Notes under the pieces: generated by a model
What the model was told of the DNA's origin: nothing
The model's input: the letters and a program-made list of their open reading frames with translations, nothing else
Database searches by the model: none
Shown: positions 12,717 to 50,205 of the stretch, in pieces
Layout: the number at the start of each line of letters is the position of its first letter
How positions within the stretch are numbered: position 1 is the first letter of the stretch
Virus record (IMG/VR): IMGVR_UViG_3300017917_003822
Coordinates: 62,001 to 126,000 of that record
DNA length: 64,000 nucleotides
Strand: one strand, 5' to 3'
Position numbers and translations under genes: made by a program

Positions 12717-14441
12717 ATGAATATATTTAAGAAAAATAACATCCTTATTAACGGTCTTCTCGGAGATACGTTCAACTTTTTGCAGGCTACCTATAATCAG
12801 ACATCTAATGTCTTTACAGTAGCTTCTGCTTGGGGTCAAATATTATTTGTTCTTCAGAATTTATCACAATTAATTCTTTATTTTATAGAGGATTCGATCA
12901 CTGAATTGAACATGCAGGAAGCAACTAGAGATTACTCAATCCGAAGTTTAGCTAGAATAGCCGGATATGATCCAGGAAGAGCAAATGCAGCACAAGGAGA
13001 AGTTTCTATTTCATGGAATACTAGGGAGGGAGACGTAGGAGGTGGTTCCATCATACTTAGAAACAATAGTCAAATCAGATGTCTTCAGAACGGTAAGGTT
13101 TATTCTTTAATTTTCGGAAGTCCTGAAGTAACTATACCTCTCGTTAGAGGAAACACAATAAGAGTAAAAATAGCACAGGGTACCTTTGAGTCTGCGATAG
13201 TGACCGGAACAGGATTGGCTCTTCAGAGTTTTAATATACCTTCAAGTTCTGGTGCTCTTCTAGACCAGTTTTATGTTGATGTCTATGTTAACGAGGAAAA
13301 ATGGAGAAAATATGATTCACTCTATGATATACCTTTGAATGGGAAAGGATATCTAGTTAAGACTGGAATACAGGAGGGACTTGATATCTATTTTGGAAAC
13401 TCCAATTTTGGAATGGTTCCGCCTAGAGGTTCCAGAATAAGAATAGAATATTTACAGACTGCAGGTGCGGGTGGTAATGCAAATTCAACTAAAGAGACCC
13501 CTTTAACATATAGATTTTCTAGTAACGGTACGGATTTATTTGGAAGAGAGGTTGATGTTAACCTTTATCTGGATATAAAAAATGAAATAGATCCATCATT
13601 CGGAACTAATCCAGAAACGACCAATTTGATTAGGTTGGTTGCACCTAAAACCAGTAGATCTTTCGTTTTTGCTAATGCCGATAATTACGAAGTTTTCTTA
13701 AATAAACTTGGAATATTCTCTCAGATACAGGCTTTTTCGACATTTGATGATGAGTATCTAGACGATGATAATGTCATCTACCTTTATCTAGTTCCTGACA
13801 TTACATTAAATCTTTCCACTAACGAGGATTATTTTAGTGTTCCAGTGGAGGATTTTTTATTGACAGCTCAACAAAAAGCTAGAGTGATTAACCTCATAGA
13901 ACAATCAGGGTCCATGATCGCAACGACGGTTGTTAAGATAGTACAACCAGTTATCGCAAAATATGTTGCTAATGTCGTTCTTGGTATTTTTGAGGGATCT
14001 GATCCTGAAACTATTAAGCAGACAATAAGAAAAAGGATTTCGGAATATATGCTTTCTCTAAAGAGAAGAGACAAGATACCTAAATCCGATTTCATAGCCA
14101 TTATAGAGAGCGTCCCTGGAGTTGATACGGTTTCATTTTTCTTCGTTGGACAGAAGAATGAGGAAAATCAAATAGAGATAAGAAATCTTAGCAATGTTTC
14201 ACAGGCTCAGCTTGACGAGGTTATTGGTATGGATCAATTTGGTGATATTGTTATAGGCAGAAATGAATTGGTTTTACTAAGAGGAGGCTGGACGGATAGA
14301 AATGGAACATTCTACACGGAGTCGATCGTTGAAGGAAAACCTGGACCTCTTAACATAACAATAGCTTCGATAGTCCCTAGAAACTTTAGAAGTGAATTGA
14401 ATGCAGATTTAAAAGCACAGATTATAGCACAGGGATCTTAA
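12717..14441 (+). CDS. Baseplate wedge protein (gp6 / baseplate J-like)
   Basis: ATRDYSIRSLARIAGY, DIYFGNSNFGMVPPRGSRIRIEY...G.GGN and ADNYE motifs; follows gp25. Confidence 0.85.
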   Translation: MNIFKKNNILINGLLGDTFNFLQATYNQTSNVFTVASAWGQILFVLQNLSQLILYFIEDSITELNMQEATRDYSIRSLARIAGYDPGRANAAQGEVSISWNTREGDVGGGSIILRNNSQIRCLQNGKVYSLIFGSPEVTIPLVRGNTIRVKIAQGTFESAIVTGTGLALQSFNIPSSSGALLDQFYVDVYVNEEKWRKYDSLYDIPLNGKGYLVKTGIQEGLDIYFGNSNFGMVPPRGSRIRIEYLQTAGAGGNANSTKETPLTYRFSSNGTDLFGREVDVNLYLDIKNEIDPSFGTNPETTNLIRLVAPKTSRSFVFANADNYEVFLNKLGIFSQIQAFSTFDDEYLDDDNVIYLYLVPDITLNLSTNEDYFSVPVEDFLLTAQQKARVINLIEQSGSMIATTVVKIVQPVIAKYVANVVLGIFEGSDPETIKQTIRKRISEYMLSLKRRDKIPKSDFIAIIESVPGVDTVSFFFVGQKNEENQIEIRNLSNVSQAQLDEVIGMDQFGDIVIGRNELVLLRGGWTDRNGTFYTESIVEGKPGPLNITIASIVPRNFRSELNADLKAQIIAQGS

Positions 14442-35391: not shown

Positions 35392-38300
35392 ATGTCCGGA
35401 GCAAAGCTTTTTGATTATAATTCATCCTTCGCCGTTATAAGAACAAATCCCAAGCTAACTGGGAATTTGAAAATAACGGTGGAATCCAATAACAGAGTTA
35501 GTTTTAATTCTCTTAGTGTTAACTCAACGCTTAGTAATGATAGATTTAAGAATTTTAATATTACTGGAGAGAATAGTTTTGCTTTGGATGTTTTTAATTT
35601 TTTTGATAAAGGAACAACTCCAGCTTCAGCGATATTTCAGGTTGGTGAGTTCACCAGGGGATCTAGAGAACCTGCAAAGCAATTTGGCGAGCAGTATGAC
35701 TTTTTTTATGCTAGCGGTGCATCTGCCTTAGCCGATAAAAATTACTCTGAGTCTTTTAGCTACTTTGCCCCTCTATGGATAAAGAATGAAATTCCCGATT
35801 ATTTTGTTATATTCAAGGTTCCTGGTGCTGTTAGTTATCCATACTCCACCAATCAAACAACAATTTCAAGCTCGTTAAAGTACAAGCTAGTTCAAAACTA
35901 CGACAGTCCTGAGGTTTTTAAAATCACGTACGGAAGAGACCCATCAGGAAATGATGTTGTTTATTCTGCCGGTGATATTTTTACTGGATCTAGTAACTAT
36001 AATTCCTACACGATTCTTTCTGGTAGTGGTATAGTCGTTCTTTTCGATGAATTGGCAAATTTACCTCTGGTAAATGACGTAGAATCACTTTTTAATAGCA
36101 AGATAATTCCGAATCTTTCTGTCGTAAAAACATTTGATATAGGAGAAAATAGTAAAATTGGAAAATATATCAGATCTATATTTAATGATAAGCAGTTTTC
36201 CAAATCACCAATGGAAGTTAGCTGGGGACCTAATTCCTATACATATTTTAACGGAGTTTCAGTTTCCGATGGTATATTTACCAAGAAGGGAGAGATCTTA
36301 ACTTCATATTATACCAGCGATTCTTCCGATAAGATGATGGATTTTGAGTCATATATGACTTCCGGATTTTCTAGAAATAATATAATATGTCCAAATCTTC
36401 TGAATCTTGAGTTCCTATTCGATGATCCTGATTCTGATATGTACACCATTAACAGATACATGGGATTCTATGTTTCTAAAAATGACATGGCCTCATTTAG
36501 ATTAAATGGTAATTTTTTCTATGAATATAGAAATCTGGAGGGTAATAACGATTCACCAAAACCATCAAGAAACTCTTTTGGTTATTATTATGATAATAAC
36601 AGCTACGGTGTAACTGCATCTACAGGAGTTAGACTTTTTTATGAAGAAGCAACAGGATTTCTTCCTGGTTCTAATGATGTTAATTTATTAAACCCACATA
36701 AATTATTTTATATCACTGACAAGGAAAATAATTTTTATACACTTAAGAGGGATGAGGGTTATTTGGTACCAGGTGGAAATTCACCGGCATATTCATATGG
36801 TCCTTTTAACAGTACAACCGGAGAATTTTCAGCAACTGGATCGACTGGTGCTACAATGGGATCCTTTGTGATACAAGATAATTTTGTAGATCTTCTATCT
36901 TTCACCGGTACTGATGTTAAAATAGCCACAGTTCCTGGAGTTCTTGCTAGCGAAGCTGGTAAAGCTTACTGCGATGTTGAGTTTCTTAAACCTTATGATT
37001 TAAATAAGCCTTTAACTTTTAAAATATATTGGCCAAATGGTAGAAGAACGGAGGGATCTAGAAAATATGACATTGTCCAATCAGAGGATCTTTCCGCTAT
37101 TTTAGTATGGGTTGCAGGATCTTATTATTCAACCGGATCCACCTTCTATTTTAATGCTTCGGCTGGTACTACTGAACAGATTGCTACTGGACTATCAAGT
37201 CTATTTGATATCGTGAATCCAACTACATGGGAAAGCGGATCCAATTTAAATACATCTATCATAAGATTGAAGGATTCGGGAACCTATGGAAACGAAGCTT
37301 ATTCCATAAGTGTTTTTGATGACTATGATTCGTTTACTTCTAGATACAGGGGAAATTGGTCAAATACAAGTGCATATGCTTCCGGTGATATTGTCCTTTA
37401 TAATGATATCTATTATTTGACAAACACCAACATAAGTTCACCCTCACCAGGTTCTTTTAATAACAACCCATCAATTTCTGGATGGAGTAGATACTCGACC
37501 TTTTCCAATTCTGGTTACATTAAAATAAACGGTATAGATGCATCACAAATAACTAGTAATGTACATTTTAATGGCGGAACTAGAACTAAAGATACTAGAG
37601 TTACCTTTCCTATTGAATATGATGGATTCGTTAAGCCTGGAAGTTTTATAAAAACGACCGAAGGATATTCTATCATAACATCGGTTACAAGATATGTGGA
37701 TTCACCTCAGAGGGATTCAGTTACCAATAAGATAACCGGATTTAATAATTTTAGCTATACTAAGGTTGCTAACATAGCAGATTATATACCGAATGACCTC
37801 TCTAGAAGAAACACCCTAACATATCCAAGAATAGAATTGGGGTCTGATCGTTCTTTTAATGTTTATGGAACACCTAAATTAAATGCTGGAGTTTTCACAT
37901 TTTTTGATACCAAAGAATTTGATTTCGATTTTTGGTCTTCCAATTATGGATACACCCCAACCCCGGAAACCTATAAATACTTTCAGCTTGAAGTTGGTGC
38001 AAGTGGATCAATTTCGCCCGGAATACCATATCTGGTAAAACAAGGGCAAGCAAATTACAATGGTTCCTTATATATTGAAGGTTCCATATTTTATGGTGTA
38101 ACCGGATCTAGCTTTTTTACTGATGCTAGTCCAAACTTATACAAGGAACTTGTTGTTTTTCCTGCACAGTATTCGGATATTTCTTATGATCCTATATTAA
38201 CGAATTACGGAAACCAAATAGGTTACAATGGTGATTTAAATGCATTTAATGGATTCATTGGAATTCAGAGTTTAGATCCACAGCCTATCCCGGCTTCAGC

Positions 38301-40908
38301 TTCTAAAACTCAAATATTCGAGAGGGGTAAACTCGAAACTGAATATGAATATCTGGAGGAGAATTACACCCCAGAAAGAGCTAATGTTTCCAGAATAGTT
38401 CCTTTTATCAATAAGTGGGTTTATACTTCTGGAACTGATGCTAGAGGTAATTCATACAGGCTAAATCTTAGTCCAGCTTTTACTCCGACAAATTTTTCAC
38501 CTAGTATTGATAAGAATATACCCGATTCTAGATATATTACCCATGAGTGGTTCTTATTAGAGGAACCGCCCAGACAGTTCCCTGTCAATGAAATGCAAAA
38601 TCAGAACAGTTATCTTGCGGGTAAGATAGATCTCGACAAAGCAAGAAGTGCTGATCCTGCAGATTCACTTTATTTATCATCATATTTTACTGTTGAACCC
38701 CAGGATTATGCATCGGAATATGTTGATCCGAAAGCATATACCAAGGAGTTATTCACGCCTCTGACATATAATAAATCTAATGGATATTATGAAACTCTTT
38801 TTAGAGGAGTAAAAGTCTATCTAAAGAAAAGATCAAATCTTTCTAATTCGGTTGCGGATTCACTTGACAAATATATTCCACAATACAGAGGATATGAAGA
38901 TTATAAATTTGCTGCAATATTAAGGGCCGTACCTGAGGATGATTCAATTATACAGGATCCGGTAAGTTACGAGGTTATAGAAAATTCCCAACAAAAGTTT
39001 GTTCTTTTTGTTTGTAATGTTCTTATGAGGGATTATAAATCTCTTCCTCTTGGATATACCGGAGGAACAGGAGGAACCCCACAATTGGACTATACTCTTT
39101 TATATTCGTTAAGTAACAAAGAAAGCCTAAAATCTACACTGATCACGGGGGAAAGACTCTATGATATTGCTGACATTAAACTAAGTTCGGCTCTGGATCT
39201 ATCATTATCTTCGGGAAGTATAGTTAATACCACAATAAGTCCTGGTATCATAAATTACATACCTAGCGCAACATACGATACCGACTTGAGAGAGGAAATT
39301 CACACATTCTTTGTGGAAAATTCTGTTGGTGCAACTGCGGGACCAGATCCTACAGGAAGAGGAAGTTTTATTGTTCCTGGTATAGCTGGTAGTCCAACTT
39401 ATCCTTGGCCGATAGGTGTCGGTCCAAATTATATTGAATTTGGAAGAGTAGCAACGGGATCTGCTTCCTACATATTTAATATACCTTTTTCTGCTGCCGA
39501 TCCGGTGACGGTTCCGGTTGGACCTTCTTCCGTTTATCGAAATAATCCAGTTTTTCAAATTCAGGGAGGAGAAAGTTACTATGATTCGATATTGCAGAGG
39601 ACTTCTGTTGCTGACATTGCTAGAAGAGTTAATTCAAGCTCAACATACATTAGATATCGAACTTATGTTTGGGATCCAATTAACTCAGTTACTGTTGAAA
39701 GAAATAATGATTTTGAGCTTTATATAGAAAAACCAACAAGACTAGTTAAAACAAGAGGGACTAGAACTTCTAAGTTTTATGGCGGACCACAAACAATAGG
39801 AGAATCTACGCCAACCGGATATATTATGCAATCCAATCAAAATCTACCGTCCACACTTCTGAGATATTCGGGTGGATATGAGCCTATATTTAGAAAAGTG
39901 GTTCATTTTGATAATGATAAATCCGATAAGATTTACGGATACAATCAGATGGATCTGTCCTTTAGAAATTGTAATTTTGCACCAAATAAATATTATTTTG
40001 GGGTATCTAGAAACCTACAATTTACTAAAGTTTCACTGGACAATAATATTCTCTCGTTGAGTCAAAATTTACCTGAAGGACCAGTTTATCCTCTTGTTGG
40101 TCAGTCACCAATATGGAAGAAGGATTTTAATTTATTCTCTTCATCTTGGGATCCTGGATATTATCAGCAATTTACGGGTGCAGAAACTTATGTTGATGTA
40201 GCAGGTACTAGATCAATGAAGGAATTTAAATCTTTCTTTGGTTCTAAAATAATGAAAACCCCTGACCCTGTACAGTTTAATAATTACATAACATTACAGA
40301 TTTCTAGAACAACCGGTTCTTCCGATGTTGCTTCTGTAAATGAAATGATAAATTCTTATTTGGCTCCGATACAGTCAATAACCCCTTCAAACTCGTCTTC
40401 CGGTATAGGTAGTGTTGGACCATATCTTTCTGGAGTTGATTATAATAAGTTGGATCTATCTATATTCCCTGATGCTGAGTTAATTTGGCAATATTTTCCA
40501 GAGACTAATTCAATTAGGGGTATAATAAGACTTGATAGAATGTTAAGGAGATATCTTCTTAATTCAGGTATAAAACAGACTTTTATAGACAATATCATAT
40601 CTGATTTTGGTGTTGGTGATCCGGATTCCATAAACGATGATGTAAATGCTTATATTGATTTAAACGTTTCCCCGTTATATCAGGGTAATATATTTGATAT
40701 GTACGTCAAGAAGTCGTCTGAACCTCTGAACCAAAATTACATGGTTAGAGGGGACATAGCAAATTCCGAAAAATATAAGCTGGAATTTTTCAATGAACCA
40801 AACTATAAATTAACAAAAAATAGGGATTTAATTTACGATTTTGAGTATAATCTAGAAACAAATTATAACTACTCATTATTATTTAATCTTGGAATAACTA
40901 AAATATAA
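35392..40908 (+). CDS. Very large structural protein with a CBM5/12-like module
   Basis: 1838 aa; WSNTSAYASGDIVLYNDIYY...W near 37350-37490 is a chitin-binding type 3 signature. Confidence 0.55.
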   Translation: MSGAKLFDYNSSFAVIRTNPKLTGNLKITVESNNRVSFNSLSVNSTLSNDRFKNFNITGENSFALDVFNFFDKGTTPASAIFQVGEFTRGSREPAKQFGEQYDFFYASGASALADKNYSESFSYFAPLWIKNEIPDYFVIFKVPGAVSYPYSTNQTTISSSLKYKLVQNYDSPEVFKITYGRDPSGNDVVYSAGDIFTGSSNYNSYTILSGSGIVVLFDELANLPLVNDVESLFNSKIIPNLSVVKTFDIGENSKIGKYIRSIFNDKQFSKSPMEVSWGPNSYTYFNGVSVSDGIFTKKGEILTSYYTSDSSDKMMDFESYMTSGFSRNNIICPNLLNLEFLFDDPDSDMYTINRYMGFYVSKNDMASFRLNGNFFYEYRNLEGNNDSPKPSRNSFGYYYDNNSYGVTASTGVRLFYEEATGFLPGSNDVNLLNPHKLFYITDKENNFYTLKRDEGYLVPGGNSPAYSYGPFNSTTGEFSATGSTGATMGSFVIQDNFVDLLSFTGTDVKIATVPGVLASEAGKAYCDVEFLKPYDLNKPLTFKIYWPNGRRTEGSRKYDIVQSEDLSAILVWVAGSYYSTGSTFYFNASAGTTEQIATGLSSLFDIVNPTTWESGSNLNTSIIRLKDSGTYGNEAYSISVFDDYDSFTSRYRGNWSNTSAYASGDIVLYNDIYYLTNTNISSPSPGSFNNNPSISGWSRYSTFSNSGYIKINGIDASQITSNVHFNGGTRTKDTRVTFPIEYDGFVKPGSFIKTTEGYSIITSVTRYVDSPQRDSVTNKITGFNNFSYTKVANIADYIPNDLSRRNTLTYPRIELGSDRSFNVYGTPKLNAGVFTFFDTKEFDFDFWSSNYGYTPTPETYKYFQLEVGASGSISPGIPYLVKQGQANYNGSLYIEGSIFYGVTGSSFFTDASPNLYKELVVFPAQYSDISYDPILTNYGNQIGYNGDLNAFNGFIGIQSLDPQPIPASASKTQIFERGKLETEYEYLEENYTPERANVSRIVPFINKWVYTSGTDARGNSYRLNLSPAFTPTNFSPSIDKNIPDSRYITHEWFLLEEPPRQFPVNEMQNQNSYLAGKIDLDKARSADPADSLYLSSYFTVEPQDYASEYVDPKAYTKELFTPLTYNKSNGYYETLFRGVKVYLKKRSNLSNSVADSLDKYIPQYRGYEDYKFAAILRAVPEDDSIIQDPVSYEVIENSQQKFVLFVCNVLMRDYKSLPLGYTGGTGGTPQLDYTLLYSLSNKESLKSTLITGERLYDIADIKLSSALDLSLSSGSIVNTTISPGIINYIPSATYDTDLREEIHTFFVENSVGATAGPDPTGRGSFIVPGIAGSPTYPWPIGVGPNYIEFGRVATGSASYIFNIPFSAADPVTVPVGPSSVYRNNPVFQIQGGESYYDSILQRTSVADIARRVNSSSTYIRYRTYVWDPINSVTVERNNDFELYIEKPTRLVKTRGTRTSKFYGGPQTIGESTPTGYIMQSNQNLPSTLLRYSGGYEPIFRKVVHFDNDKSDKIYGYNQMDLSFRNCNFAPNKYYFGVSRNLQFTKVSLDNNILSLSQNLPEGPVYPLVGQSPIWKKDFNLFSSSWDPGYYQQFTGAETYVDVAGTRSMKEFKSFFGSKIMKTPDPVQFNNYITLQISRTTGSSDVASVNEMINSYLAPIQSITPSNSSSGIGSVGPYLSGVDYNKLDLSIFPDAELIWQYFPETNSIRGIIRLDRMLRRYLLNSGIKQTFIDNIISDFGVGDPDSINDDVNAYIDLNVSPLYQGNIFDMYVKKSSEPLNQNYMVRGDIANSEKYKLEFFNEPNYKLTKNRDLIYDFEYNLETNYNYSLLFNLGITKI

Positions 40909-40911
40909 AAT

Positions 40912-42450
40912 ATGCCTGTTACTAATATACAATCTTTAAATTATGGTGACTCACAATCACAGATCATCGACAAAATAAACTACAATTTTGACGAGATTGT
41001 CGAGGCTCATGGGGGAACTCAGGGTATTACCGGACCTACCGGGGATGTTGGACCTATTGGTTCGAGAGGTCCCATCGGATTTACAGGAGGTACCGGGGTT
41101 AGAGGTACTAGATGGTTTGTTGACTTAGTCCAGCCATCGGGAACTTTTAACACTGTTTCAGAGGGTGACTTTTGGATAGACGCCAGTGACGGAAGAATTT
41201 TTATTTTTACCGAATCTGGATGGACAAACACTGGATATACATTAGCTTCAGGAGGTAATATATTTAAACAGGAGGACTCATATTTCTCATCGGGTGGAAC
41301 CGGATCAGCTATTCTTTTTGACCAGATACTACCTCAGAATTATCTCATGATTATAGCTGACAAAGTACCAGAGTCGGGCGTACTGAATGAAAATTTGTCT
41401 AAATTTGTAATTTCCACAGATACCACTGTTAACGATTCACCGGTATTGGAGTTCTCCAAGAGTAATGTTGAATCTGGGGATATCTCTGATTACTCTCAGC
41501 ACCCTATCTTCAGATGGAAAAATTTCGACCCATTAAATAATTCTCTGGTTTTAGAAATACCCGGCGGATCTTTCGTAATAGGTTCCTCTGGAGGATTCCA
41601 ATCAACATTTGACTTTTTAACGGTACAGACACCATCAGCAACTTCCATTTCTTATGGTGCAACTTCAGGATCTGGTATATTTTCTACGGGAGGGTTTGAA
41701 TTAAATACCAGCGGACAATTTAAATTTAGAAGTTCTTTTTTTAATGTCACTGGTGGATCTGGTTATATTTCCGCGCCTGTTAATTTAACGGCAAGTCTTA
41801 CCCCGACAACCCCCTCAATCTTCACTTTTAGTGGTGGAACTGCAGGTTTCAGAACTTCAAGATCCGGTGACAGTTTTAATACGTTGTCAAACTCCGTTTA
41901 TGCTCTTTCGTTAGAATCATCTTCCGATCGTGAATTTTTCATAAACACAAAGGGAAAAATAAGAACAAAAAAAGCGGAGACCTCGATTTCCTATGCATCG
42001 ACTACACCTGGAGCTACCAGTACAGTATCGTCTAATTTGGTTAACTGGTACCTTATTTCAAGAACTTCTACTCCTGTGGCATCCTCAGTTTTACAATCAG
42101 GTAACACCATAGTCATAAATCCGGTTATACCAACCAGCAGCTATGTTGGTATTGGAGTTTATAGTGCAGCTGATTACTCTTGGGGAACGACTGGTGGACT
42201 TGAACCTGGTCAATCCATAGATATTAATGTCCACTATAGTCCAAACACAACTCAAAGGGGTTTTAGTGAGGGCTTCCGTTATATTGGTAAAGGAGCAACC
42301 AGTGGGGACGTATCAAATGTAATCACTTTACCTTTCGCAGCAACTAACGTGGACTTCACTTTAGCTAGAGGAGTTACATCCAGTAATATGACCGTTTTTT
42401 ATAGAGCTTATGGTTCTACTGGTGGATCTGGTGGATCTTTTGTTGTCTGA
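40912..42450 (+). CDS. Collagen-containing tail fibre, paralogue 1
   Basis: GDSQSQIIDKINYNF anchor, (GXY)10, then GDFWID. Confidence 0.75.
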   Translation: MPVTNIQSLNYGDSQSQIIDKINYNFDEIVEAHGGTQGITGPTGDVGPIGSRGPIGFTGGTGVRGTRWFVDLVQPSGTFNTVSEGDFWIDASDGRIFIFTESGWTNTGYTLASGGNIFKQEDSYFSSGGTGSAILFDQILPQNYLMIIADKVPESGVLNENLSKFVISTDTTVNDSPVLEFSKSNVESGDISDYSQHPIFRWKNFDPLNNSLVLEIPGGSFVIGSSGGFQSTFDFLTVQTPSATSISYGATSGSGIFSTGGFELNTSGQFKFRSSFFNVTGGSGYISAPVNLTASLTPTTPSIFTFSGGTAGFRTSRSGDSFNTLSNSVYALSLESSSDREFFINTKGKIRTKKAETSISYASTTPGATSTVSSNLVNWYLISRTSTPVASSVLQSGNTIVINPVIPTSSYVGIGVYSAADYSWGTTGGLEPGQSIDINVHYSPNTTQRGFSEGFRYIGKGATSGDVSNVITLPFAATNVDFTLARGVTSSNMTVFYRAYGSTGGSGGSFVV

Positions 42451-42456
42451 TATATA
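42449..42456 (+). promoter_or_regulatory. Putative late promoter GATATATA
   Basis: Overlaps the TGA stop of fibre 1; 33 nt before fibre 2. Confidence 0.55.
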
Positions 42457-42481
42457 CAATAATTATTCCACTTAATCTCAA

Positions 42482-44167
42482 ATGGCAGAATTAAAATTAC
42501 TAAGAATAGAGGAGGGTGACTCTCAGAAGACTTTAACAGATAAGGTAAATGTAAACTTTGCCAATCTGATAATCTTTGATGGTGGTCCCTATGGTAGAAT
42601 TGGAGAAAAAGGTCCAGAGGGAGCTAAAGGTGCCACCGGGCCGATTGGATCGTATGGAGATCGAGGGGTTCGTGGTACAATTTGGACTGTGGGTCCCTGC
42701 CAGCCAAGCCCAACAGGATCTATAGTCGGTGATTTTTGGTTGAATACAGATAATTCAAATTATGTTTATCGTTTCGGATCGGATAGAAATTGGTCACAAT
42801 ACGGTTTTAATTTAAAATCTGAGGATCTTTTCAGGGTATACGGACCACTTTTGAACTCAGCTGGTACCACTAATAAATACGGTTATTTTCTATCATCCAA
42901 TACTCCGATAGATTATACTGTTGTTATTACCGATAATCCATCTATGGATAGCGGAACTGAATTTTCACCAAACCCAATATTCAATCCACAATATTCAAAG
43001 TTTGTTATATCCGTGGACGGAACAAATCCTAATAAAAACATATTAGAATTCACAAAATCTGATTATGATGATACCTCGTTCACTGAAGGAACTCCTAGAT
43101 TTTATTGGAATCAGGGTCCTACTGCAGACAGAGGAAATTATGGGTTATCCTTCAAAAATTATGACCGGACAAATTTTAGCCTACCTAATTCAACTCTGAG
43201 ATTCGAGTCAACTTCGTCATCTATATCCCTTGATTCAGTCGGATTCAATCTTTATCTAAATAGTCAACAGTTATTTACTGTTAATTCATCAGGTGAAATT
43301 TATTTTGATTTCAATAACGGTACTGCTCTGTTTTCAACAAGAAATATATCATATAGCCCAAGTGGGTTTAATTTAACTACTGGATTAAATGTTTATTCAG
43401 AGTCAAGTGATCAAAATCCTCCACTGCATCTTATATCAGGATCTGCTGGAACCGGAAATTTAAGATACCTTTATAACTCGACGCCAAGTAATTCAGCATT
43501 TTTATTTAGAGTAGTTCAGGGAACAGGTACGTTATTTTCCACCTTTGGTGCGGGATATACTTTCATGGATAAGAGGGTTAATTCTATACAATCCCCACAA
43601 AATTTAACCCAAACTGCTTCAGGAACATATGGGTCAACTACCGTAAATTGGACAGCAGTTATACCATCCATAGCTGTAAATACAACGTCGGGTGATTATT
43701 TTTATGCAAATAATGGATCTGATTTTGTTATTGAAAGATCACCATCAGCTTCTCCCGGTGACAGAGGCATCTGTATATGGACTCCAGCAACAGGTGGAAC
43801 CGTTGGCTTTAACGGAGGATGGTTAAATTTGGTGGAGGATCAAGAGGCTATCACATTTAGAGTACATAGCACAAATCCGGGATCAACAGCAGATTGTTTT
43901 AGATATCTTGGATTGAATACGAGCCAATCCCCAAATATTATACCATCAACGTTTAATTCTGGTGTAAATGAGGCAGTTGCAATTTTACCTGCTGGTGAAT
44001 ATGCTTCCACTGCCGAATTTACGGTTGTTAACGTAAGGGGTGCAACTGGAGGTGCCGGTGGAACAGGAGGAACTCGAAGATGGTACAAAGTATTTTATTC
44101 TGCGTGGGGCGGTAATTTATCAAATACCTATTGTGGGGTTTTAACAACAAGTAATTCAATAGCTTAA
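42482..44167 (+). CDS. Collagen-containing tail fibre, paralogue 2
   Basis: GDSQKTLTDKVNVNF anchor, (GXY)10, then GDFWLN. Confidence 0.75.
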   Translation: MAELKLLRIEEGDSQKTLTDKVNVNFANLIIFDGGPYGRIGEKGPEGAKGATGPIGSYGDRGVRGTIWTVGPCQPSPTGSIVGDFWLNTDNSNYVYRFGSDRNWSQYGFNLKSEDLFRVYGPLLNSAGTTNKYGYFLSSNTPIDYTVVITDNPSMDSGTEFSPNPIFNPQYSKFVISVDGTNPNKNILEFTKSDYDDTSFTEGTPRFYWNQGPTADRGNYGLSFKNYDRTNFSLPNSTLRFESTSSSISLDSVGFNLYLNSQQLFTVNSSGEIYFDFNNGTALFSTRNISYSPSGFNLTTGLNVYSESSDQNPPLHLISGSAGTGNLRYLYNSTPSNSAFLFRVVQGTGTLFSTFGAGYTFMDKRVNSIQSPQNLTQTASGTYGSTTVNWTAVIPSIAVNTTSGDYFYANNGSDFVIERSPSASPGDRGICIWTPATGGTVGFNGGWLNLVEDQEAITFRVHSTNPGSTADCFRYLGLNTSQSPNIIPSTFNSGVNEAVAILPAGEYASTAEFTVVNVRGATGGAGGTGGTRRWYKVFYSAWGGNLSNTYCGVLTTSNSIA

Positions 44168-44168
44168 T

Positions 44169-46343
44169 ATGCATTTCAATACTAAATACATTTTTCAGGG
44201 TGACGATAGAGGTGAAATCGCCAGCAAGATCAATTACAACTTTGATCAGATAATTTCATTTGCTGTTGGTCCTGATGGACATATTGGCCCAAGAGGAGCT
44301 ACTGGATTATATGGTCCTGCAGGATTTAAGGGATTAACAGGAGCTACTGGAGCGAGAGGAACGATGATATTTAAACAACCAACTCAACCTCTTCCTTCTG
44401 AAACACAGGAATATGACATTTGGGTGGATAATTCTTCAGGTGAGGGTGACGTGAATGTTTTAGGAGCTACCGGAACTTGGAATTATTCAGGTTATTCTTT
44501 TTTTAGTTCCTCGTATTTTTCAACCTATTCTTGGATACTTGGACCAGCTGGATCCACTGATAAATATGTTGTTGGTATTAAAGATATAGCAAATGCTCCT
44601 ATCACTAATCTGGTTATAAGCGACGGTAACCCAACATCATCAGTTTCAAATCCAAATAATTCTAAGGTTCTTGTTGCCACGCAAGATCAGACGTCAACAC
44701 CAATATTTACTCTATCTAAAACTGGAGCTATTTCTTCTGGAGTACCTTCTTTTTATTGGGAGTCTACTGGATCCAATCGTAATCTTGTTTATAGGTCAAC
44801 GGGTGATCTTGAGATAATATCTCAGTTGAGGATGTCTATAGATTCAGGCCTGGCAAGAACTCTTTTATTTGGTAATAATGTTAATATAACAGCCTCGAGT
44901 TTTACTGTGGGTGGATCTGGTGATTTCCAACTAGCAGCAAACACAACTGTTGGTAGTGGTGGTATATTTAATGTACAGTCTCAAAATTTACTGATCGCCT
45001 CCTCATATTTCACTAGTGCTGATCCTTTGACTATATACGCAGCATCAGGAAATTATGTTCTCAATGATGTCCCAGTTTCTGCTGGATTAAACTCCGGTAT
45101 AACAATATCAACAACATCCACGGCAAATGATAGTTTTTCGATAAATGATCTAACTGGAAATCCGATTTTATCGGGTAAACCATTTGGATCGGTTGATAGC
45201 GGGAAACACTCACAAACAATATTTGGCTCAACCGGTGGATTTACCGGAGGTACCGCCGGTCCATTTTCATACCATGTAAGAAGGGCTTCTCAAGTTACTA
45301 AAAGCACGGTTACAGTTCTATCAGCTGCTCGATATCTTTCAACCACAGCAGGGACAGATACCCTAAATAACGTTTTCGATCTAACAGATCTGTCTCTTTG
45401 GAATTCAAATGTTATAGTCGTTACACCTACATTGTATACGAATAGCGGACAAGCTGGGGTTTATTTGAGAATACCAGCATCATATTTGAATTCATTAGAG
45501 CCAGTTTATAATACGGGTCGAACCAATATTTATAGAATTCTTTTAAACTCACTAGATTCTAGTTTATCTGCTAGGTTTATTAATGGTTTTGTTTTCAGTT
45601 ACACCAATTACGGTTCAGGAGGACTAACTTCAACGTCGATTTTAAATTACTTTAATTTACCAACTCCGATTTCTATTAATAGTTATTGCCAGTATATCGA
45701 TCTCCATTGGCTAGGAATATCAAACTCTTCCAATCTTAATCCGAGACTTTTCTATAAAGCATGTAACGGTGTCGGTGGATATTTAGAATTAACCAACTTA
45801 AATAGTATAGGATCGGAACAACCTATTACATCCGGGTCATCTCCAACCTCTGGTACAGGAAGCCCGAGTTTTGACGACGGTAGCTTCATTTCAAGTGGTG
45901 GTGGATCGTTTTTCAATCCATTCTGTCCAACTCCAGATATGTTAATTTATTTAGGTGATGGTAATTGGATTGCTGCTGGGGAGCTTAATATCGGAGATAT
46001 AGTATATACGCTTCATGAGCAAACTAACCAGTGGGATTATTATAAAGTTTCTTCAGTTGACAGAGCCACTCAGCCTGTTATCTCTGCAATTATTGGGGGC
46101 AAAGAAATTAAGGTATCAGAGCACCATAGATTCCTCACTGTTGATAATGAGTATGTTTCCATTAACGACCTTCAGATTGGTTCCGAACTTAGAACGATCG
46201 ACGGTTCAGTTAAATTAGAATCTAAAACAAATATAGGAGAGACTGAAGTTGTTAAAATAGAAATTGAAAATGCACATACGTATGTTCTGGAGGGTGTAAT
46301 CTCACACAACGTAAAAATAAGTCAGTTTATAGCAGCACCATAA
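44169..46343 (+). CDS. Collagen-containing tail fibre, paralogue 3, with a C-terminal Hint domain
   Basis: GDDRGEIASKINYNF anchor, (GXY)10, then YDIWVD; C-terminal CPTPDM...SHN. Confidence 0.75.
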   Translation: MHFNTKYIFQGDDRGEIASKINYNFDQIISFAVGPDGHIGPRGATGLYGPAGFKGLTGATGARGTMIFKQPTQPLPSETQEYDIWVDNSSGEGDVNVLGATGTWNYSGYSFFSSSYFSTYSWILGPAGSTDKYVVGIKDIANAPITNLVISDGNPTSSVSNPNNSKVLVATQDQTSTPIFTLSKTGAISSGVPSFYWESTGSNRNLVYRSTGDLEIISQLRMSIDSGLARTLLFGNNVNITASSFTVGGSGDFQLAANTTVGSGGIFNVQSQNLLIASSYFTSADPLTIYAASGNYVLNDVPVSAGLNSGITISTTSTANDSFSINDLTGNPILSGKPFGSVDSGKHSQTIFGSTGGFTGGTAGPFSYHVRRASQVTKSTVTVLSAARYLSTTAGTDTLNNVFDLTDLSLWNSNVIVVTPTLYTNSGQAGVYLRIPASYLNSLEPVYNTGRTNIYRILLNSLDSSLSARFINGFVFSYTNYGSGGLTSTSILNYFNLPTPISINSYCQYIDLHWLGISNSSNLNPRLFYKACNGVGGYLELTNLNSIGSEQPITSGSSPTSGTGSPSFDDGSFISSGGGSFFNPFCPTPDMLIYLGDGNWIAAGELNIGDIVYTLHEQTNQWDYYKVSSVDRATQPVISAIIGGKEIKVSEHHRFLTVDNEYVSINDLQIGSELRTIDGSVKLESKTNIGETEVVKIEIENAHTYVLEGVISHNVKISQFIAAP
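45924..46310 (+). other. Hint / bacterial intein-like (BIL) domain, 129 aa
   Basis: Cys1 (CPTPDM), block B-like VSEHHRF, block F/G VVKIEIENAHTYVLEGVISHN; the +1 residue is Val. Confidence 0.9.
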
Positions 46344-46364: not shown

Positions 46365-46628
46365 ATGATAAATCTAACAAAAAAAGAACAGGAAAGCATG
46401 CTTAATCTATCTAAGGAATTTGTAAGCATACATCAAGAGATTCTCCAGGTTGAGAAAACTATTAAGGAGATGGAAGACAGATCATGTGAATTGATATCCC
46501 AACTCGAGAGATGCAGAGAAAACGAGAGTGATTTTATCTGCAAATTAGAAAAAAAATACGGAATCGGATCTCTAGATCCTATCAATCTCGTATGGAAAAA
46601 AGAAACAGTAAATAATGAAGTACATTAA
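46365..46628 (+). CDS. Small coiled-coil protein
   Basis: 87 aa with a heptad pattern and a KYGIGSLDP end; overlaps the next gene. Confidence 0.55.
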   Translation: MINLTKKEQESMLNLSKEFVSIHQEILQVEKTIKEMEDRSCELISQLERCRENESDFICKLEKKYGIGSLDPINLVWKKETVNNEVH

Positions 46629-47463
46629 CAAAGAAAATTTAGGTAAGATATCGGGTTTATTAGGAAATAGATTTTTTCTAATTGCAGTAATTGTTGTTTT
46701 AATAATGCTCTCGTTAAAACAGTGTGGTGATGTCGATCATGCTAAAGCTGAAGCATTAAGAGAACATAATAACTATTTGGCATCTCTTGATTCGGTTAGA
46801 GTTATAAAGAATGAGCTTGGAGAGCTTATCGTGGAAAAATCGGCATATCAACTTAAGGTTTCTGAATTAAGCAATGAACAAAAAGATCTGATAAAAAGAC
46901 TCGACTTAAACACGAACGGGAGAGGAACAACACCAAAGACCGTTATCCAGACAGTTTCAGAATATAATGAAACTATAACAAACATAAAATCGGAGGTTGT
47001 TAAGGACCCAAATGGTTCTGAAGCAATAACATTCAATCATGAACCAACTTTACCAGGAAAAAATAAATTAAAAATATCAGGAAAGGTACCATACGATCTT
47101 AATTTACTGAGGGATCCTGCAGATTCTACTAAATATATAGCTTCAGTTAATCCACTAGGTACAACTTTAACCATAGAGCAGAATATTGATATCGTTACTG
47201 GTCTTTATCAAGATCCCAAATCTAAAAGAATAATGACTAGGGTAAGTACAACCTATCCAAATTTAACTTTTAGCGAAGTTAATTCTTTTGATATTACTGA
47301 TAATCCGGAAGCTAGAAAAGCTTTAAAAGCAGCTAGAAAGGAATTTGGTCTTGGAGTAAGCGTAGGTTATGGTTTAATAGGAAACTCAAATAGCATGAGC
47401 ACCGGTGTTTTTGTTGGACTTGGTCTCCACTATACACCAAAATTTTTACAATTCGGAAAATAA
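46615..47463 (+). CDS. Membrane-anchored coiled-coil protein, possible spanin
   Basis: N-terminal transmembrane segment FFLIAVIVVLIMLSL followed by KQC, a coiled coil, and a C-terminal amphipathic beta-hairpin FGLGVSVGYG..VFVGLGLHY. Confidence 0.45.
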   Translation: MKYINKENLGKISGLLGNRFFLIAVIVVLIMLSLKQCGDVDHAKAEALREHNNYLASLDSVRVIKNELGELIVEKSAYQLKVSELSNEQKDLIKRLDLNTNGRGTTPKTVIQTVSEYNETITNIKSEVVKDPNGSEAITFNHEPTLPGKNKLKISGKVPYDLNLLRDPADSTKYIASVNPLGTTLTIEQNIDIVTGLYQDPKSKRIMTRVSTTYPNLTFSEVNSFDITDNPEARKALKAARKEFGLGVSVGYGLIGNSNSMSTGVFVGLGLHYTPKFLQFGK

Positions 47464-47472
47464 AATATAAAA

Positions 47473-50205
47473 ATGGCATTTACTACTACATCCAAATTTG
47501 TACAGATTACTCCATACCTTTTGATGGAGTATATGTATGCTGATGAACCAACACCGGAAACACACTTTGTTAATAGTGGAGGGGTTACCGTGGGGTATAA
47601 TAAATTGATAAATGGATATAGAAGTAATACAGTCCAAATTTTCAATAGAAATTCCGATTATCCCACTACACATAATACAACCGAGAATAACGTGGTTAGA
47701 ATAGGTGAGTCATCTTTTGTGACACTTGATTCCAATCTGATAGTTCCATTTAATGATTACTCTGATGAGCTAACTGATACTATAAACTTACCAATAGTTT
47801 TTCCGTCTAATTTGCTGGTTGTTTATGATACTGTTAGATATCACATAAGAGCTGGATATAATCTAAACAATCTTGATGGCTTGATTTTAACTGTCGAGTA
47901 TCAAGATCAAAATTTAGAATACGTTACAGCTTCTCAAATTCTATTAAAGAAAGGAACTGAGCAAGAGTACAATTTAAATCCAAATCCAGTTACGATCGGA
48001 GCAAATATCTATGATAAGTACTTTGAGATAAAGCTTCCTAACTTGAAGGATATGAACGATAAGTATTTAGCTGCTTCGTCCGCTTTTAAACCAGAAACAC
48101 TTGCTTCGTTAATTAGTTCGAGTGGAAATGGATTTATTTACGGATCCCCACTAAGAGTAACTGCTTGGCAGGTTCAAAATACTGTAGATTTTAACGGCTA
48201 CGAGAGATATAATTGTGCCGAAATAGCTACACTTTCTCTAGAGCAGGAGGATCCTTTTTCTAATATAGGTGCTACCATCAAGGAATCCGACAGGGGTCAA
48301 TTTTTTGAATATTATGCAACTGATAACGAGGGATTTATAGAGGATTTTATACTTTTTCAAAATTCGATAGGAAATGGGTATTATATAAGTCACCAGATAG
48401 AAGTACTAGAACAAATAGGGGCAGCTCTTATACAAACCTCAGGTTTCCAGTCTATACAAACGACTGCATACGATCTTCCTAATTACTATAGACCTATTGT
48501 TAGAAACGCAGCTGTTGCTGCTAGTTTTACCCTTAGATACACGATGTCTCTGATTAATAGCGTTAATCAAAGTCGAATAATTAGAATATCTACATACAGC
48601 TCGGTTAACCCTAGTCAGTGGGGAACTAATATAACTCCGATACAGCTAAGTACATTCCCGCAAGTTCAGAAGATCTATAACAGAGTTTATTCACAACCTG
48701 GTATTACTGTTGGCGGCGGAACAACAGTAGCACCTAAGGAAATTGTTAAATACACGAACGTTTTTATTAATCAAAATTATGTTACGTCCACAGTAAATAA
48801 TTTGACATTTACTGATAATAGTCTGAATATAAATTCAGGAGCTGAACAAACAACGGCTTTTGGAACCGGAAAAATGAACATCACAATTTCACCATTCGAC
48901 AATTACTACAAGTTTAAATTTATTAAAAGTGGTCCTTCAGCAGATCCAGTTCCGATTGATTTAAGTGCTTCTGGTAATTTTAATATCTCCTTTGTTGATA
49001 ATGTTGGTAACAAAATACAGGTTCCCGCACTGGAGGATAGAAATCTAGCAAATCCATCAACTGGAGAATTAGCTTTTAAACTTGATGAATCCATTTCAAC
49101 CAAGGTTCTTCAGCTAAGCGACAGAAGATTTTTTATTACAAACGGAACATCCATAAATAATGCTCAATCCGGAGTTGCTGCAAAAGAGGTGGTTTCAGTT
49201 GATGCAGGTGTTACTGATAATGTGGTTGAAAAGAGAATTGAATCTGTCATCGCAAATAGAAGAAATGAAGCTATGGCTATCAGCGGAGCCAATAACTATA
49301 TAAATATTCCAGCATCCAATATACTTACACCAGTAAATAATGCTAATTCTGTCATGTATTGGGGGTATTGGAAAAAACCAGGAGAGGATGATATTATTGT
49401 TGGTGCTACAGCAGCAGCTCCAGTTATAACTCCGACTAGTGGTGTTGGTGTTGTTGGAGCTGTAGAGGAACCTGCTCCTGTTCCTATAATTAAAAATGTA
49501 AAACCGAGAACTTCGGGTTCTGGTAAATTCTTGATTGGTTCCGCAACTGCGAACACCACTGAGACATTAACTGGAAGTGCATTGATATCAGCTCTAAGTG
49601 CTGAAATTGCTGGATATAAAGCTACTGGATGGCAGGATCAGACCATTATAAATTACTTCATGGTTCCTGGTAAAGCTGGATATATTAAATATCCTGGACT
49701 AACCAAACAACAGTTTATCCAGGCAGCTACTGGTATATTAGCACCGGCGACTCTAACTAGATTTGGTAGAACAAATAATGGCGGTGGCGGATGTCCAACT
49801 CCAGATATGAGGATCTTAACATCAGATGGTGATTATATTAAGGCTGGTGATATTAAAGTAGGAACTAGTGTTCATACGGTCCATGAAAAAACTGGAGAAT
49901 TTGGTGACTATAGAGTTTCTTATGTGGGTAGAATGATCCAGCCTATATTAAGAGTCAGCATAGATGGAAAATCTATAACAGTTTCAGATTCCCATAAATT
50001 TTTAACTGAGAATGGTGAATATGTTACAATCTCTAACATAACTGAGGGCACTTTAATTAAAACCATTAACGGATTAGCAAAACTTGAAAGTAAGCAGAGA
50101 ATAGGTGAGGGAGAGGTTATTAAAATAGAGGTTGAAAATGCACACACTTACGTTCTGGAGGGAGTTATCTCACATAACATTAAAGCTGCTTCCTTAGTAG
50201 AATAA
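47473..50205 (+). CDS. Large structural protein with a C-terminal Hint domain
   Basis: 910 aa; ends NNGGGG-CPTPDM...VISHN-IKAASLVE. Confidence 0.65.
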   Translation: MAFTTTSKFVQITPYLLMEYMYADEPTPETHFVNSGGVTVGYNKLINGYRSNTVQIFNRNSDYPTTHNTTENNVVRIGESSFVTLDSNLIVPFNDYSDELTDTINLPIVFPSNLLVVYDTVRYHIRAGYNLNNLDGLILTVEYQDQNLEYVTASQILLKKGTEQEYNLNPNPVTIGANIYDKYFEIKLPNLKDMNDKYLAASSAFKPETLASLISSSGNGFIYGSPLRVTAWQVQNTVDFNGYERYNCAEIATLSLEQEDPFSNIGATIKESDRGQFFEYYATDNEGFIEDFILFQNSIGNGYYISHQIEVLEQIGAALIQTSGFQSIQTTAYDLPNYYRPIVRNAAVAASFTLRYTMSLINSVNQSRIIRISTYSSVNPSQWGTNITPIQLSTFPQVQKIYNRVYSQPGITVGGGTTVAPKEIVKYTNVFINQNYVTSTVNNLTFTDNSLNINSGAEQTTAFGTGKMNITISPFDNYYKFKFIKSGPSADPVPIDLSASGNFNISFVDNVGNKIQVPALEDRNLANPSTGELAFKLDESISTKVLQLSDRRFFITNGTSINNAQSGVAAKEVVSVDAGVTDNVVEKRIESVIANRRNEAMAISGANNYINIPASNILTPVNNANSVMYWGYWKKPGEDDIIVGATAAAPVITPTSGVGVVGAVEEPAPVPIIKNVKPRTSGSGKFLIGSATANTTETLTGSALISALSAEIAGYKATGWQDQTIINYFMVPGKAGYIKYPGLTKQQFIQAATGILAPATLTRFGRTNNGGGGCPTPDMRILTSDGDYIKAGDIKVGTSVHTVHEKTGEFGDYRVSYVGRMIQPILRVSIDGKSITVSDSHKFLTENGEYVTISNITEGTLIKTINGLAKLESKQRIGEGEVIKIEVENAHTYVLEGVISHNIKAASLVE
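49792..50178 (+). other. Hint / BIL domain, 129 aa
   Basis: Cys1, VSDSHKF block B, VIKIEVENAHTYVLEGVISHN; the +1 residue is Ile. Confidence 0.9.

What the first reader, a model, noticed from the sequence alone, without database searches (positions are those of the whole stretch)
40912..46343. Three tandem fibre paralogues with exactly register-matched collagen segments: a possible heterotrimeric fibre
Seen: all three start with GD-x6-K[IV]N[YV]NF, followed by exactly 8 residues, exactly 10 Gly-X-Y triplets ending G[VA]RGT, and a D[FI]W[ILV] block. The X/Y residues and the distal parts are highly diverged, and only the third carries a Hint domain. Established: phage fibres are normally homotrimers, and the N-terminal motif resembles the T4 gp9/gp10 anchor. 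Inference: conserved length despite sequence divergence fits either a 1:1:1 heterotrimeric triple helix or three homotrimers that fit equivalent sockets.
Basis: partly seen in the sequence, partly recalled or inferred. Interest (0 to 1): 0.65.

Follow-up and report, generated by a model that had tools for sequence, protein, structure and literature searches.

The report
Three tandem collagen-stalk phage fibre paralogues
Three neighbouring fibre genes of an uncultured jumbo phage share an inherited anchor motif and a short collagen stalk of fixed length, and because related phages with one or two such genes keep the same length, the match reflects common descent and a shared baseplate fit rather than a mixed three-chain fibre.

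Summary
ORFs A (40912-42450), B (42482-44167) and C (44169-46343) each have a leader with GD-x7-K[IV]N-x-NF (x7, not x6). Eight residues follow, then ten Gly-X-Y triplets plus G-T, then a D[FI]W block. No indel occurs anywhere in this stretch.

The register match is inherited, not a heterotrimer signature. In about 68 syntenic loci from related Bacteroidota-type jumbo myoviruses, the same slot holds three genes (A-B-C), two genes or one. Single-copy phages, including a 100 %-complete 482-kb genome, keep the identical 41-residue NF-to-W spacing. Another clade carries two adjacent module-bearing fibres that are out of register.

A, B and C are three old orthologous groups, each with its own conserved leader, collagen X/Y residues and C-terminus. 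C's length varies independently (548-1279 aa).

T4 gp10 and gp9, adjacent genes that each form a homotrimer, carry the same GD-x7-KIN-x-[ND]F motif.

Best reading: three separate homotrimeric baseplate fibres on one ancestral anchor-stalk module. An ABC heterotrimer is not excluded (about 7 %).

The C-terminal Hint of C is a bacterial-intein-like self-cleaving domain. A second copy ends a nearby 910-aa protein.

Ordinary to moderately interesting.

The parts
40912..42450 (+). Fibre A (512 aa). Leader aa 1-34 (40912-41013) carries GD-x7-KINYNF. The collagen stalk is aa 35-66 (41014-41109). A post-collagen beta domain with GDFWID spans aa 67-~125. The C-terminal beta-sandwich is ~aa 370-512, ending in the A-specific ...GGSGGSF-x-x.
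42482..44167 (+). Fibre B (561 aa). It has the same module, with the collagen at aa 35-66 (42584-42679). B-specific conserved features are the leader M-x-ELKLLRIE-x-GDSQK, the triplets GPY and GSY, and the C-terminus ...YYSAWGG...CGVL-x-T-x-N.
44169..46343 (+). Fibre C (724 aa). Its leader is one residue shorter (MHFNTKYIF-x-GD). The collagen is aa 34-65 (44268-44363). The fibre body runs to ~aa 585 and is followed by a C-terminal Hint domain.
45924..46310 (+). Hint (bacterial-intein-like) domain of C, aa 586-714. It starts at Cys (CPTPDM) and ends in His-Asn. A 10-residue tail follows, beginning with Val, so there is no +1 nucleophile.
   Evidence: Profile A5 hits PDB 2LWY (bacterial intein-like domain) at E=2.2e-11 and also hits mini-inteins. 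Pfam Intein_splicing and PT-HINT score below their cut-offs.
49792..50205 (+). Second Hint copy, at the C-terminus of the 910-aa ORF 47473-50205. It belongs to the same mobile domain but is not part of the fibre trio.
   Evidence: It is 51 % identical to C's Hint. Both domains start with the exact 18-nt repeat TGTCCAACTCCAGATATG. It is absent from every homologue of this ORF in related loci.
35392..40908 (+). Giant 1838-aa structural protein directly upstream (stop 3 nt before A's ATG). It marks the conserved 5' border of the fibre slot in all related loci and is a candidate baseplate partner or socket (inference).
46365..47463 (+). Two conserved small genes (87 aa, and 282 aa with an N-terminal hydrophobic helix) that form the 3' border of the fibre slot in most related loci. 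Their function is unknown.

Best explanation
A, B and C are three separate homotrimeric baseplate fibres of an uncultured ~271-kb jumbo myovirus related to phages that infect Bacteroidota. They arose by two successive tandem duplications of a single ancestral fibre gene. All three keep the ancestral N-terminal attachment module. That module is a short leader with the T4 gp10/gp9-type GD-x7-K[IV]N-x-NF motif, 8 linker residues, a ten-triplet collagen-like stalk, and a small beta domain (W...QP...GD-x-W). The beta domain probably nucleates trimerisation. The module's length is fixed because it must span a defined distance in the baseplate. This constraint applies whether a phage has one, two or three such fibres. 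The distal bodies and tips have diverged (~25 % identity), presumably giving three receptor specificities. Each paralogue group has conserved its own leader and its own exposed collagen X/Y residues. I therefore infer that each docks at its own site, as gp9 and gp10 do on T4 gp7, rather than competing for one socket. What is shown: paralogy, synteny, variable copy number, the invariant register in single-copy relatives, orthologous groups, and motif identity with T4 gp10/gp9. What is inferred: triple-helix formation, homotrimeric state, baseplate location, distinct sockets, and receptor binding.
For: (1) Copy number varies in the same syntenic slot, which lies between the giant-protein homologue and the homologues of the 46365/46615/47473/tube/RuvC/SSB genes. 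There are three genes in the close clade, two in L026 and one in L028-L035, L036-L043 and others. Whole-record profile searches find only one module in a 100 %-complete 482-kb genome and two in L026's record. The weaker hits in those searches have a different leader. (2) Single-copy fibres (L028-L035, L038) have the identical spacing of NF + 8 + 10 triplets + G-x-x-W, i.e. 41 residues. (3) In another clade, two adjacent module-bearing fibres are out of register: leader 27 / gap 6 / 13 Gly versus leader 20 / gap 8 / 12 Gly. (4) A, B and C are each monophyletic (UFboot/aLRT 100/99, 100/100, 100/98). L026's second copy is sister to C (96/80). (5) Each group has its own conserved leader, collagen X/Y residues (A: GPT; B: GPY, GSY; C: GH-x, GAT, GPA) and C-terminal signature. 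(6) Distal lengths vary independently: C 548-1279 aa, A 509-594, B 555-671. (7) T4 gp10 (GD-YLRKGGI-KINENFDELYYELG) and gp9 (GD-ILFDGGN-KINSDF) carry the motif. hhalign gives probability 73.5 % for gp10. Both are trimers encoded by adjacent genes with paralogous N-termini (PMC3004832). (8) All three collagen segments are net-positive, with no acidic/basic complementarity. (9) No DNA-level gene conversion was found among the three genes.
Against: No experiment or reliable multimer model shows the oligomeric state. The A-B-C trio is strictly retained, in order, in all ten distinct close-clade lineages, and that also fits an obligate complex. One C orthologue (L019) has a Gly-to-Ala break, and most C orthologues lose the eleventh Gly. 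Such changes are more easily tolerated in one chain of a mixed helix than in all three chains of a homotrimer. The gp10/gp9 match covers only 11-12 columns, and the profile found nothing in PDB at E<=10. The monomer model of A is poor (pLDDT 56.7). The baseplate location is inferred from synteny only.
Confidence: 0.62

Rival explanations
1. ABC heterotrimer: one chain each of A, B and C wind into a single register-matched collagen stalk and a single mixed fibre.
For: The leader-plus-collagen length is identical, and the three are homologous over the whole body. A-B-C are strictly co-retained in a fixed order in the close clade. The genes are packed tightly (3, 31 and 1 nt apart), which would suit 1:1:1 synthesis. 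A Gly-to-Ala interruption occurs in only one chain type, in L019 C.
Against: The same register is kept in phages with one fibre gene, including a complete genome, and in a phage with two. Equal length therefore predates the paralogues and needs no heterotrimer. Two-copy phages of another clade have unmatched registers. C varies from 548 to 1279 aa while A and B stay near 510-590 aa. There is no charge complementarity, since all three are net-positive. The solved collagen-containing phage fibres hit are single gene products. T4 gp9 and gp10, which share the motif, are homotrimers. One literature search with the terms heterotrimeric, tail fiber, collagen-like and phage found no report of such a fibre.
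Confidence: 0.07
2. Three homotrimers compete for one and the same socket. Virions would then carry a stochastic or regulated mixture of alternative fibres, a bet-hedging route to broader host range.
For: The anchor motif and stalk length are identical in all three. Distal parts are diverged, and C's tip is highly variable.
Against: Each orthologous group has kept its own distinct leader sequence and its own exposed X/Y residues over long divergence. This pattern suggests different binding partners. All three genes are retained in every close-clade genome. T4 gp9 and gp10 use different sites.
Confidence: 0.17
3. Branched fibre complex: one paralogue anchors to the baseplate and the others dock onto it. 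This is how the CBA120 tailspike complex works, where the gp10-like N-terminus of TSP4 serves as a hub.
For: The motif is gp10-like. Residues 353-505 of the A model show a noise-level structural similarity to CBA120 TSP4-N (Z 4.7, rmsd 3.6, 93 aligned). PMC8825819 describes such a branched assembly (abstract seen).
Against: The structural match lies below the level expected by chance for this search (notes). All three proteins carry the same complete anchor module, which argues that each attaches in the same way.
Confidence: 0.07

Closest known systems
T4 gp10 and gp9 (baseplate wedge trimers encoded by adjacent genes)
   Same: They share the N-terminal GD-x7-KIN-x-[ND]F-[DN]-x-[IL] motif at the same distance from the N-terminus. 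They are tandem genes with paralogous N-termini that lie downstream of the gp6/gp7-type wedge genes; the window has a gp6-like gene at 12717-14441. Both are homotrimers at the baseplate periphery (PMC3004832).
   Different: gp9 and gp10 have no collagen segment. Similarity is confined to 11-12 residues, and gp9 reaches only 4.5 % hhalign probability. The bodies are unrelated by sequence. There are three copies here rather than two.
Collagen-motif phage fibres (PHROG 5073, 3904, 366 'tail fiber protein'; Staphylococcus phage 80alpha upper fibre gp68, PDB 6V8I)
   Same: A short uninterrupted Gly-X-Y run lies inside a fibre protein. phrog_5073 aligns from the GD of the leader through the collagen (A residues 11-66, E=9.8e-7). 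6V8I gp68 is hit by the module profile.
   Different: The matches are driven largely by the collagen. The distal bodies have no Pfam, PHROG or PDB match. No cultured phage in INPHARED matches A by tblastn.
Heterotrimeric collagens (animal types I, IV and IX; designed ABC peptides such as PDB 9LLP)
   Same: They use three homologous chains of equal triple-helical length.
   Different: Those systems need all chains, or defined chain-selection domains, and complementary charges in designed cases. Here copy number varies among relatives, and no charge complementarity is seen.
Bacterial intein-like (BIL) / Hint domains (PDB 2LWY; Pfam PT-HINT PF07591)
   Same: C's last ~130 residues match at E=2.2e-11, with the N-terminal Cys and the C-terminal His-Asn.
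   Different: The domain sits at the extreme C-terminus of a virion fibre, followed by only an 8-10-residue tail with no +1 Cys/Ser/Thr. Cleavage rather than splicing is therefore expected. No toxin domain follows it, unlike PT-HINT.

Membership tests
Collagen triple-helix repeat (PF01391) | Uninterrupted (Gly-X-Y)n | tested here: met
   Ten triplets plus Gly in A, B and C, read directly from the sequence.
Collagen triple-helix repeat (PF01391) | Score above the Pfam gathering threshold | tested here: not met
   B scores 18.6 bits and C 20.7 bits against a cut-off of 27.2, and A has no hit. The segment is only half the model's length.
Collagen triple-helix repeat (PF01391) | Actual triple-helix formation | not testable with these tools
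   This needs CD, melting curves or a solved structure. Pro content is low (2-4 of 22 X/Y positions), so flanking trimerisation domains would be required.
T4 gp10/gp9-type N-terminal anchor | GD-x7-KIN-x-[ND]F motif near the N-terminus | tested here: met
   T4 gp9 and gp10 were translated from NC_000866. The motif and its spacing are identical in A, B and C.
T4 gp10/gp9-type N-terminal anchor | Profile-level homology of the N-terminal domain | tested here: inconclusive
   hhalign of A3 against gp10 gives probability 73.5 % over 11 columns, and against gp9 4.5 % over 12 columns. hmmsearch of the leader profile against PDB found no gp9 or gp10 at E<=10.
T4 gp10/gp9-type N-terminal anchor | Homotrimer bound to a gp7-like wedge protein | not testable with these tools
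   Only synteny bears on this: a gp6-like gene at 12717-14441 and giant structural genes upstream.
Heterotrimeric (ABC) collagen | Obligate co-occurrence of all chain genes in related genomes | tested here: not met
   Relatives have 1, 2 or 3 genes in the syntenic slot, with the same register in the single-copy genomes.
Heterotrimeric (ABC) collagen | Complementary charge pattern favouring the mixed helix | tested here: not met
   All three segments are net-positive in most lineages. A crude axial/lateral pair score shows no consistent advantage for the mixed helix. The scoring is rough.
Heterotrimeric (ABC) collagen | Predicted or measured co-assembly of the three chains | tested here: inconclusive
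   The complex job on residues 1-125 of A+B+C returned 'no answer', which counts neither for nor against.
Hint / bacterial intein-like domain | Hint-fold sequence profile, N-terminal Cys and C-terminal His-Asn | tested here: met
   2LWY at E=2.2e-11 plus mini-inteins. The Cys-Pro-Thr-Pro start and the Ser-His-Asn end are conserved in 5 copies.
Hint / bacterial intein-like domain | Pfam gathering thresholds (Intein_splicing, PT-HINT) | tested here: not met
   23.7 bits against 35.8, and 21.1 bits against 27.7.
Canonical intein (protein splicing) | +1 Cys/Ser/Thr on the C-extein and a functional C-extein to ligate | tested here: not met
   The +1 residue is Val, Ile or Lys, and only 8-10 residues follow.

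The most novel reading that the evidence does not exclude
A, B and C assemble into a genuine 1:1:1 heterotrimeric collagen-stalk fibre. This would be the first heterotrimeric phage fibre and the first natural prokaryote-world ABC collagen. Under this reading it evolved from a homotrimeric ancestor that survives in single-copy relatives.
Probability: 0.07. Interest if true: 0.8.

Novelty: new member of a known kind. Interest (0 to 1): 0.3.

Why it matters
The result explains an eye-catching regularity (three paralogues in exact register) as inheritance of a length-constrained anchor-stalk module. It also defines that module across a large, mostly uncultured group of jumbo and mega-phages of Bacteroidota. 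The module is a gp10/gp9-type motif, 8 residues, a clade-specific number of Gly-X-Y triplets (7-15 across the wider group) and a beta domain. It gives a practical marker for finding the host-recognition fibres in these genomes. It also offers a natural series (1, 2, 3 copies) for studying how baseplates acquire extra fibres. If the minority heterotrimer reading were true, the trio would be a new principle of fibre assembly and a natural ABC collagen design. The terminal Hint domains on virion proteins are a separate lead on self-processing of phage structural proteins.

Tried and rejected
- **Complex prediction:** residues 1-125 of A, B and C, with C as partner, returned 'no answer' (0.29/0.30 against a mark of 0.34; controls were not run). 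This is not evidence either way.
- **Monomer fold of A:** built with a 26-sequence alignment, mean pLDDT 56.7. Foldseek against PDB found nothing at E<=0.001. VIA-align wide gave a best Z of 4.7, which is noise level.
- **Leader and body searches:** the leader-only profile found no PDB match. The whole-module profile was swamped by collagens. Pfam, NCBIfam and PHROGs on the fibre bodies gave nothing beyond collagen-driven 'tail fiber' hits.
- **Cultured-phage searches:** blastn and tblastn of the locus and of A against INPHARED found no match. No module was found near the syntenic genes of the cultured relatives Tenacibaculum PTm1 and Flavobacterium MaF61. The uncultured 462-kb phage LR756500 has one, with 7 triplets.
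- **Charge-pair scoring:** a crude score of homo- versus heterotrimers gave no usable signal.
- **Gene conversion:** the idea that it keeps the N-termini alike was rejected. There are no DNA repeats beyond the collagen periodicity.
- **B's C-terminal Cys:** the idea that it is a Hint relic was rejected, because the ...CGVL-x-T-x-N end is conserved in all B orthologues.
- **The 910-aa protein as tail sheath:** rejected. It has no similarity to the PTm1 sheath, and its model is a chain of Ig/FnIII/macroglobulin-like beta-sandwiches.
Full report
**What is there**

The window is bases 62001-126000 of a 270,629-bp IMG/VR virus record that is estimated 99 % complete. Its genes include a gp6-like baseplate wedge subunit, several giant structural proteins, a tube-like protein, a RuvC-like resolvase, a gp32-like SSB, a primase and a helicase. 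A conserved 1221-aa neighbour finds its nearest cultured relatives among jumbo phages of Bacteroidota and allies. These are Tenacibaculum PTm1/PTm5/pT24, Flavobacterium MaF61, Chryseobacterium MA9V, Sphingomonas PAU and the Lak megaphages.

The three ORFs of the finding sit exactly where stated: A 40912-42450, B 42482-44167 and C 44169-46343. They are tightly packed behind an 1838-aa protein.

**The observation**

- The motif is GD-x7-K[IV]N-x-NF, not x6.
- Exactly 8 residues follow.
- Ten Gly-X-Y triplets follow, ending GVR/GVR/GAR and then G-T.
- A GDFW / YDIW block follows.

The three are true paralogues (A vs B E=1.9e-19, A vs C E=6.5e-12), and they are the only three in the genome. In a 26-member family alignment, none of the 57 columns covering A residues 12-68 holds a gap, whereas 36-67 % of columns elsewhere do. 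The NF-to-Trp distance is 41 residues in 25 of 26 sequences. The length constraint is therefore real.

**Comparative evidence**

A pattern-plus-tblastn scan of IMG/VR returned 68 loci. tblastn with the window's neighbouring genes shows that all are syntenic. Each has the homologue of the giant protein, then the fibre gene or genes, then homologues of the 46365, 46615 and 47473 genes, the tube-like gene, RuvC and SSB. The slot holds different numbers of module-bearing genes.
- **Three genes (A-B-C, same order):** the window and ten distinct close-clade lineages.
- **Two genes:** L026.
- **One gene (1044-1303 aa):** L028-L035, and further single genes in L036-L043, L048-L049 and others.
- **Two genes of different leader types:** L044-L047, L050-L053 and others.

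A profile of the module (A2) was searched over whole records. It finds exactly one full module in a 482-kb, 100 %-complete genome, two in L026's record and three in a close-clade record. The weaker extra hits in two records belong to collagen proteins with a different leader (MAQK...F-x-TGD-x-PT) and lack the motif.

The single-copy fibres of L028-L035 and L038 have the same register as A, B and C: NF, 8 residues, ten triplets, G-x-x-W. In the L044-type clade the two adjacent fibres are out of register (leader 27 / gap 6 / 13 Gly versus leader 20 / gap 8 / 12 Gly). Across the wider group the triplet number ranges from 7 (LR756500) to about 15. The exact match among A, B and C is thus a clade-level ancestral state that does not depend on copy number.

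**History of the paralogues**

A maximum-likelihood tree of the first 320 residues makes A, B and C each monophyletic (100/99, 100/100, 100/98). It places L026's second copy as sister to C (96/80). L026's first copy and the single-copy fibres sit in an unresolved cluster with A and B. The simplest history is one gene, then two (an A/B-type and a C-type), then three. No DNA-level repeats link the genes beyond the collagen periodicity, so there has been no recent gene conversion.

**Individuality of the three**

Each group keeps its own features across lineages that have diverged to 35-60 % identity.
- **Leaders:** A has MP-x-TNI, B has M-x-ELKLLRIE-x-GDSQK and C has MHFNTKYIF.
- **Exposed collagen residues:** A has GPT, B has GPY and GSY, and C has GH-x, GAT, GI[YF] and GPA.
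- **C-terminal signatures:** A ends ...GGSGGSF-x-x, B ends ...YYSAWGG...CGVL-x-T-x-N and C ends ...PR[IL]FYK-x-C-x-G.

Distal length varies independently. C ranges from 548 to 1279 aa, with or without Hint or other extensions, while A stays at 509-594 aa and B at 555-671 aa. All three collagen segments are net-positive, and a crude charge-pair score shows no complementarity. These features fit three separately evolving fibres whose stalks contact different partners. They do not fit three strands of one rope well. None of them formally excludes a heterotrimer. The Gly-to-Ala break in L019's C and the loss of the eleventh Gly in most C orthologues would be easier to tolerate in a mixed helix.

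**The T4 resemblance**

T4 gp9 and gp10 were translated from NC_000866. They contain GD-ILFDGGN-KINSDF and GD-YLRKGGI-KINENFDELYYELG. A contains GD-SQSQIID-KINYNFDEIVEAHG.

hhalign of the leader profile gives 73.5 % probability against gp10 and 4.5 % against gp9, over 11-12 columns. A PDB-wide hmmsearch with the leader found nothing. The resemblance is real but short, so homology is plausible and unproven.

Its value is as a precedent. gp9 and gp10 are encoded by adjacent genes and have paralogous N-terminal parts. Each is a trimer present in 18 copies at the baseplate periphery (PMC3004832).

**Structure and complex prediction**

The monomer model of A is poor (pLDDT 56.7). It does contain a helix at residues 15-23, beta hairpins at residues 68-110 and a confident C-terminal beta-sandwich at ~370-512. 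No structural neighbour rises above noise. The best hits are Z 4.7 to CBA120 TSP4-N, and Z 4.0 for residues 66-124 against the collagen XV/XVIII trimerisation domain, with 50 of 53 residues aligned. These are leads only.

**The Hint domain**

C's last ~130 residues begin Cys-Pro-Thr-Pro and end Ser-His-Asn. A profile of five copies hits a solved bacterial intein-like domain (2LWY, E=2.2e-11) and mini-inteins. Pfam scores are below their cut-offs. The residue after His-Asn is Val, Ile or Lys, and only 8-10 residues follow. I therefore predict self-cleavage that releases the mature fibre, not splicing; this is inference.

Among relatives, Hint is present on some C orthologues only. The window's second copy, on the 910-aa protein (49792-50205), is unique among the sampled loci. 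Both copies start with the same exact 18-nt sequence. This points to a mobile domain.

**Verdict**

I put the heterotrimer at about 0.07.

The system is a new member of a known kind: tandem paralogous baseplate fibres sharing an N-terminal anchor, with a short collagen stalk. Interest is modest.

Noticed in passing
window 49792-50205 (C-terminus of ORF 47473-50205) and 45924-46310: Two Hint (bacterial-intein-like) domains, 51 % identical, end two different virion-type proteins. Both start with the exact 18-nt TGTCCAACTCCAGATATG. In related loci, Hint occurs only on some C orthologues and never on homologues of the 910-aa protein. This suggests a mobile, self-cleaving C-terminal domain.
   Followed up: partly
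window 47473-49779: The Hint-less body of the 910-aa protein is conserved just upstream of the tube-like gene in all related loci. It is not a sheath. Its model (pLDDT 70.6) is a chain of Ig/FnIII/macroglobulin-like beta-sandwich domains followed by a small helical domain.
   Followed up: partly
window 62021-64000 (runs off the window): The GC jump to 0.48 at the window's end is caused by a very long collagen-like protein of G-S-S / G-T-S triplets (Pfam Collagen E=8.5e-79), encoded by nested tandem DNA repeats. Its leader (MAQFPINPRIGQAF...) is different and lacks the K-x-N-x-NF motif.
   Followed up: partly
L077 320-1537 and L078 474-1355 (records of L031 and L033): Related single-copy phages carry further collagen-repeat proteins with a different N-terminal leader (MAQK-x-R-x-x-LK-x-RF-x-TGDIPTQQDF-x-DLIDS). 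This is a second fibre-leader type in the phage group.
   Followed up: no
window 41107-41283 (A residues 66-124): The small beta domain right after the collagen gives a weak but near-full-length structural match to the collagen XV/XVIII trimerisation domain (Z 4.0, rmsd 2.7, 50 of 53 residues). The score is at noise level, but a trimerisation domain at this position would make functional sense.
   Followed up: no
window 46615-47463: A 282-aa protein with an N-terminal hydrophobic helix lies directly downstream of the fibre slot and is conserved in most related loci. It has no family match. It could be an assembly factor.
   Followed up: no
L016 13252-17076 and L027 13252 onward: The C orthologue in these phages is 1275-1279 aa, more than twice the usual size, and ends in a divergent Hint domain with an insertion.
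   Followed up: no
L083 26389 onward (LR756500.1, 462-kb uncultured phage): A single 1792-aa protein carries the same leader motif with only seven Gly-X-Y triplets. Stalk length is therefore clade-specific across the wider group.
   Followed up: no
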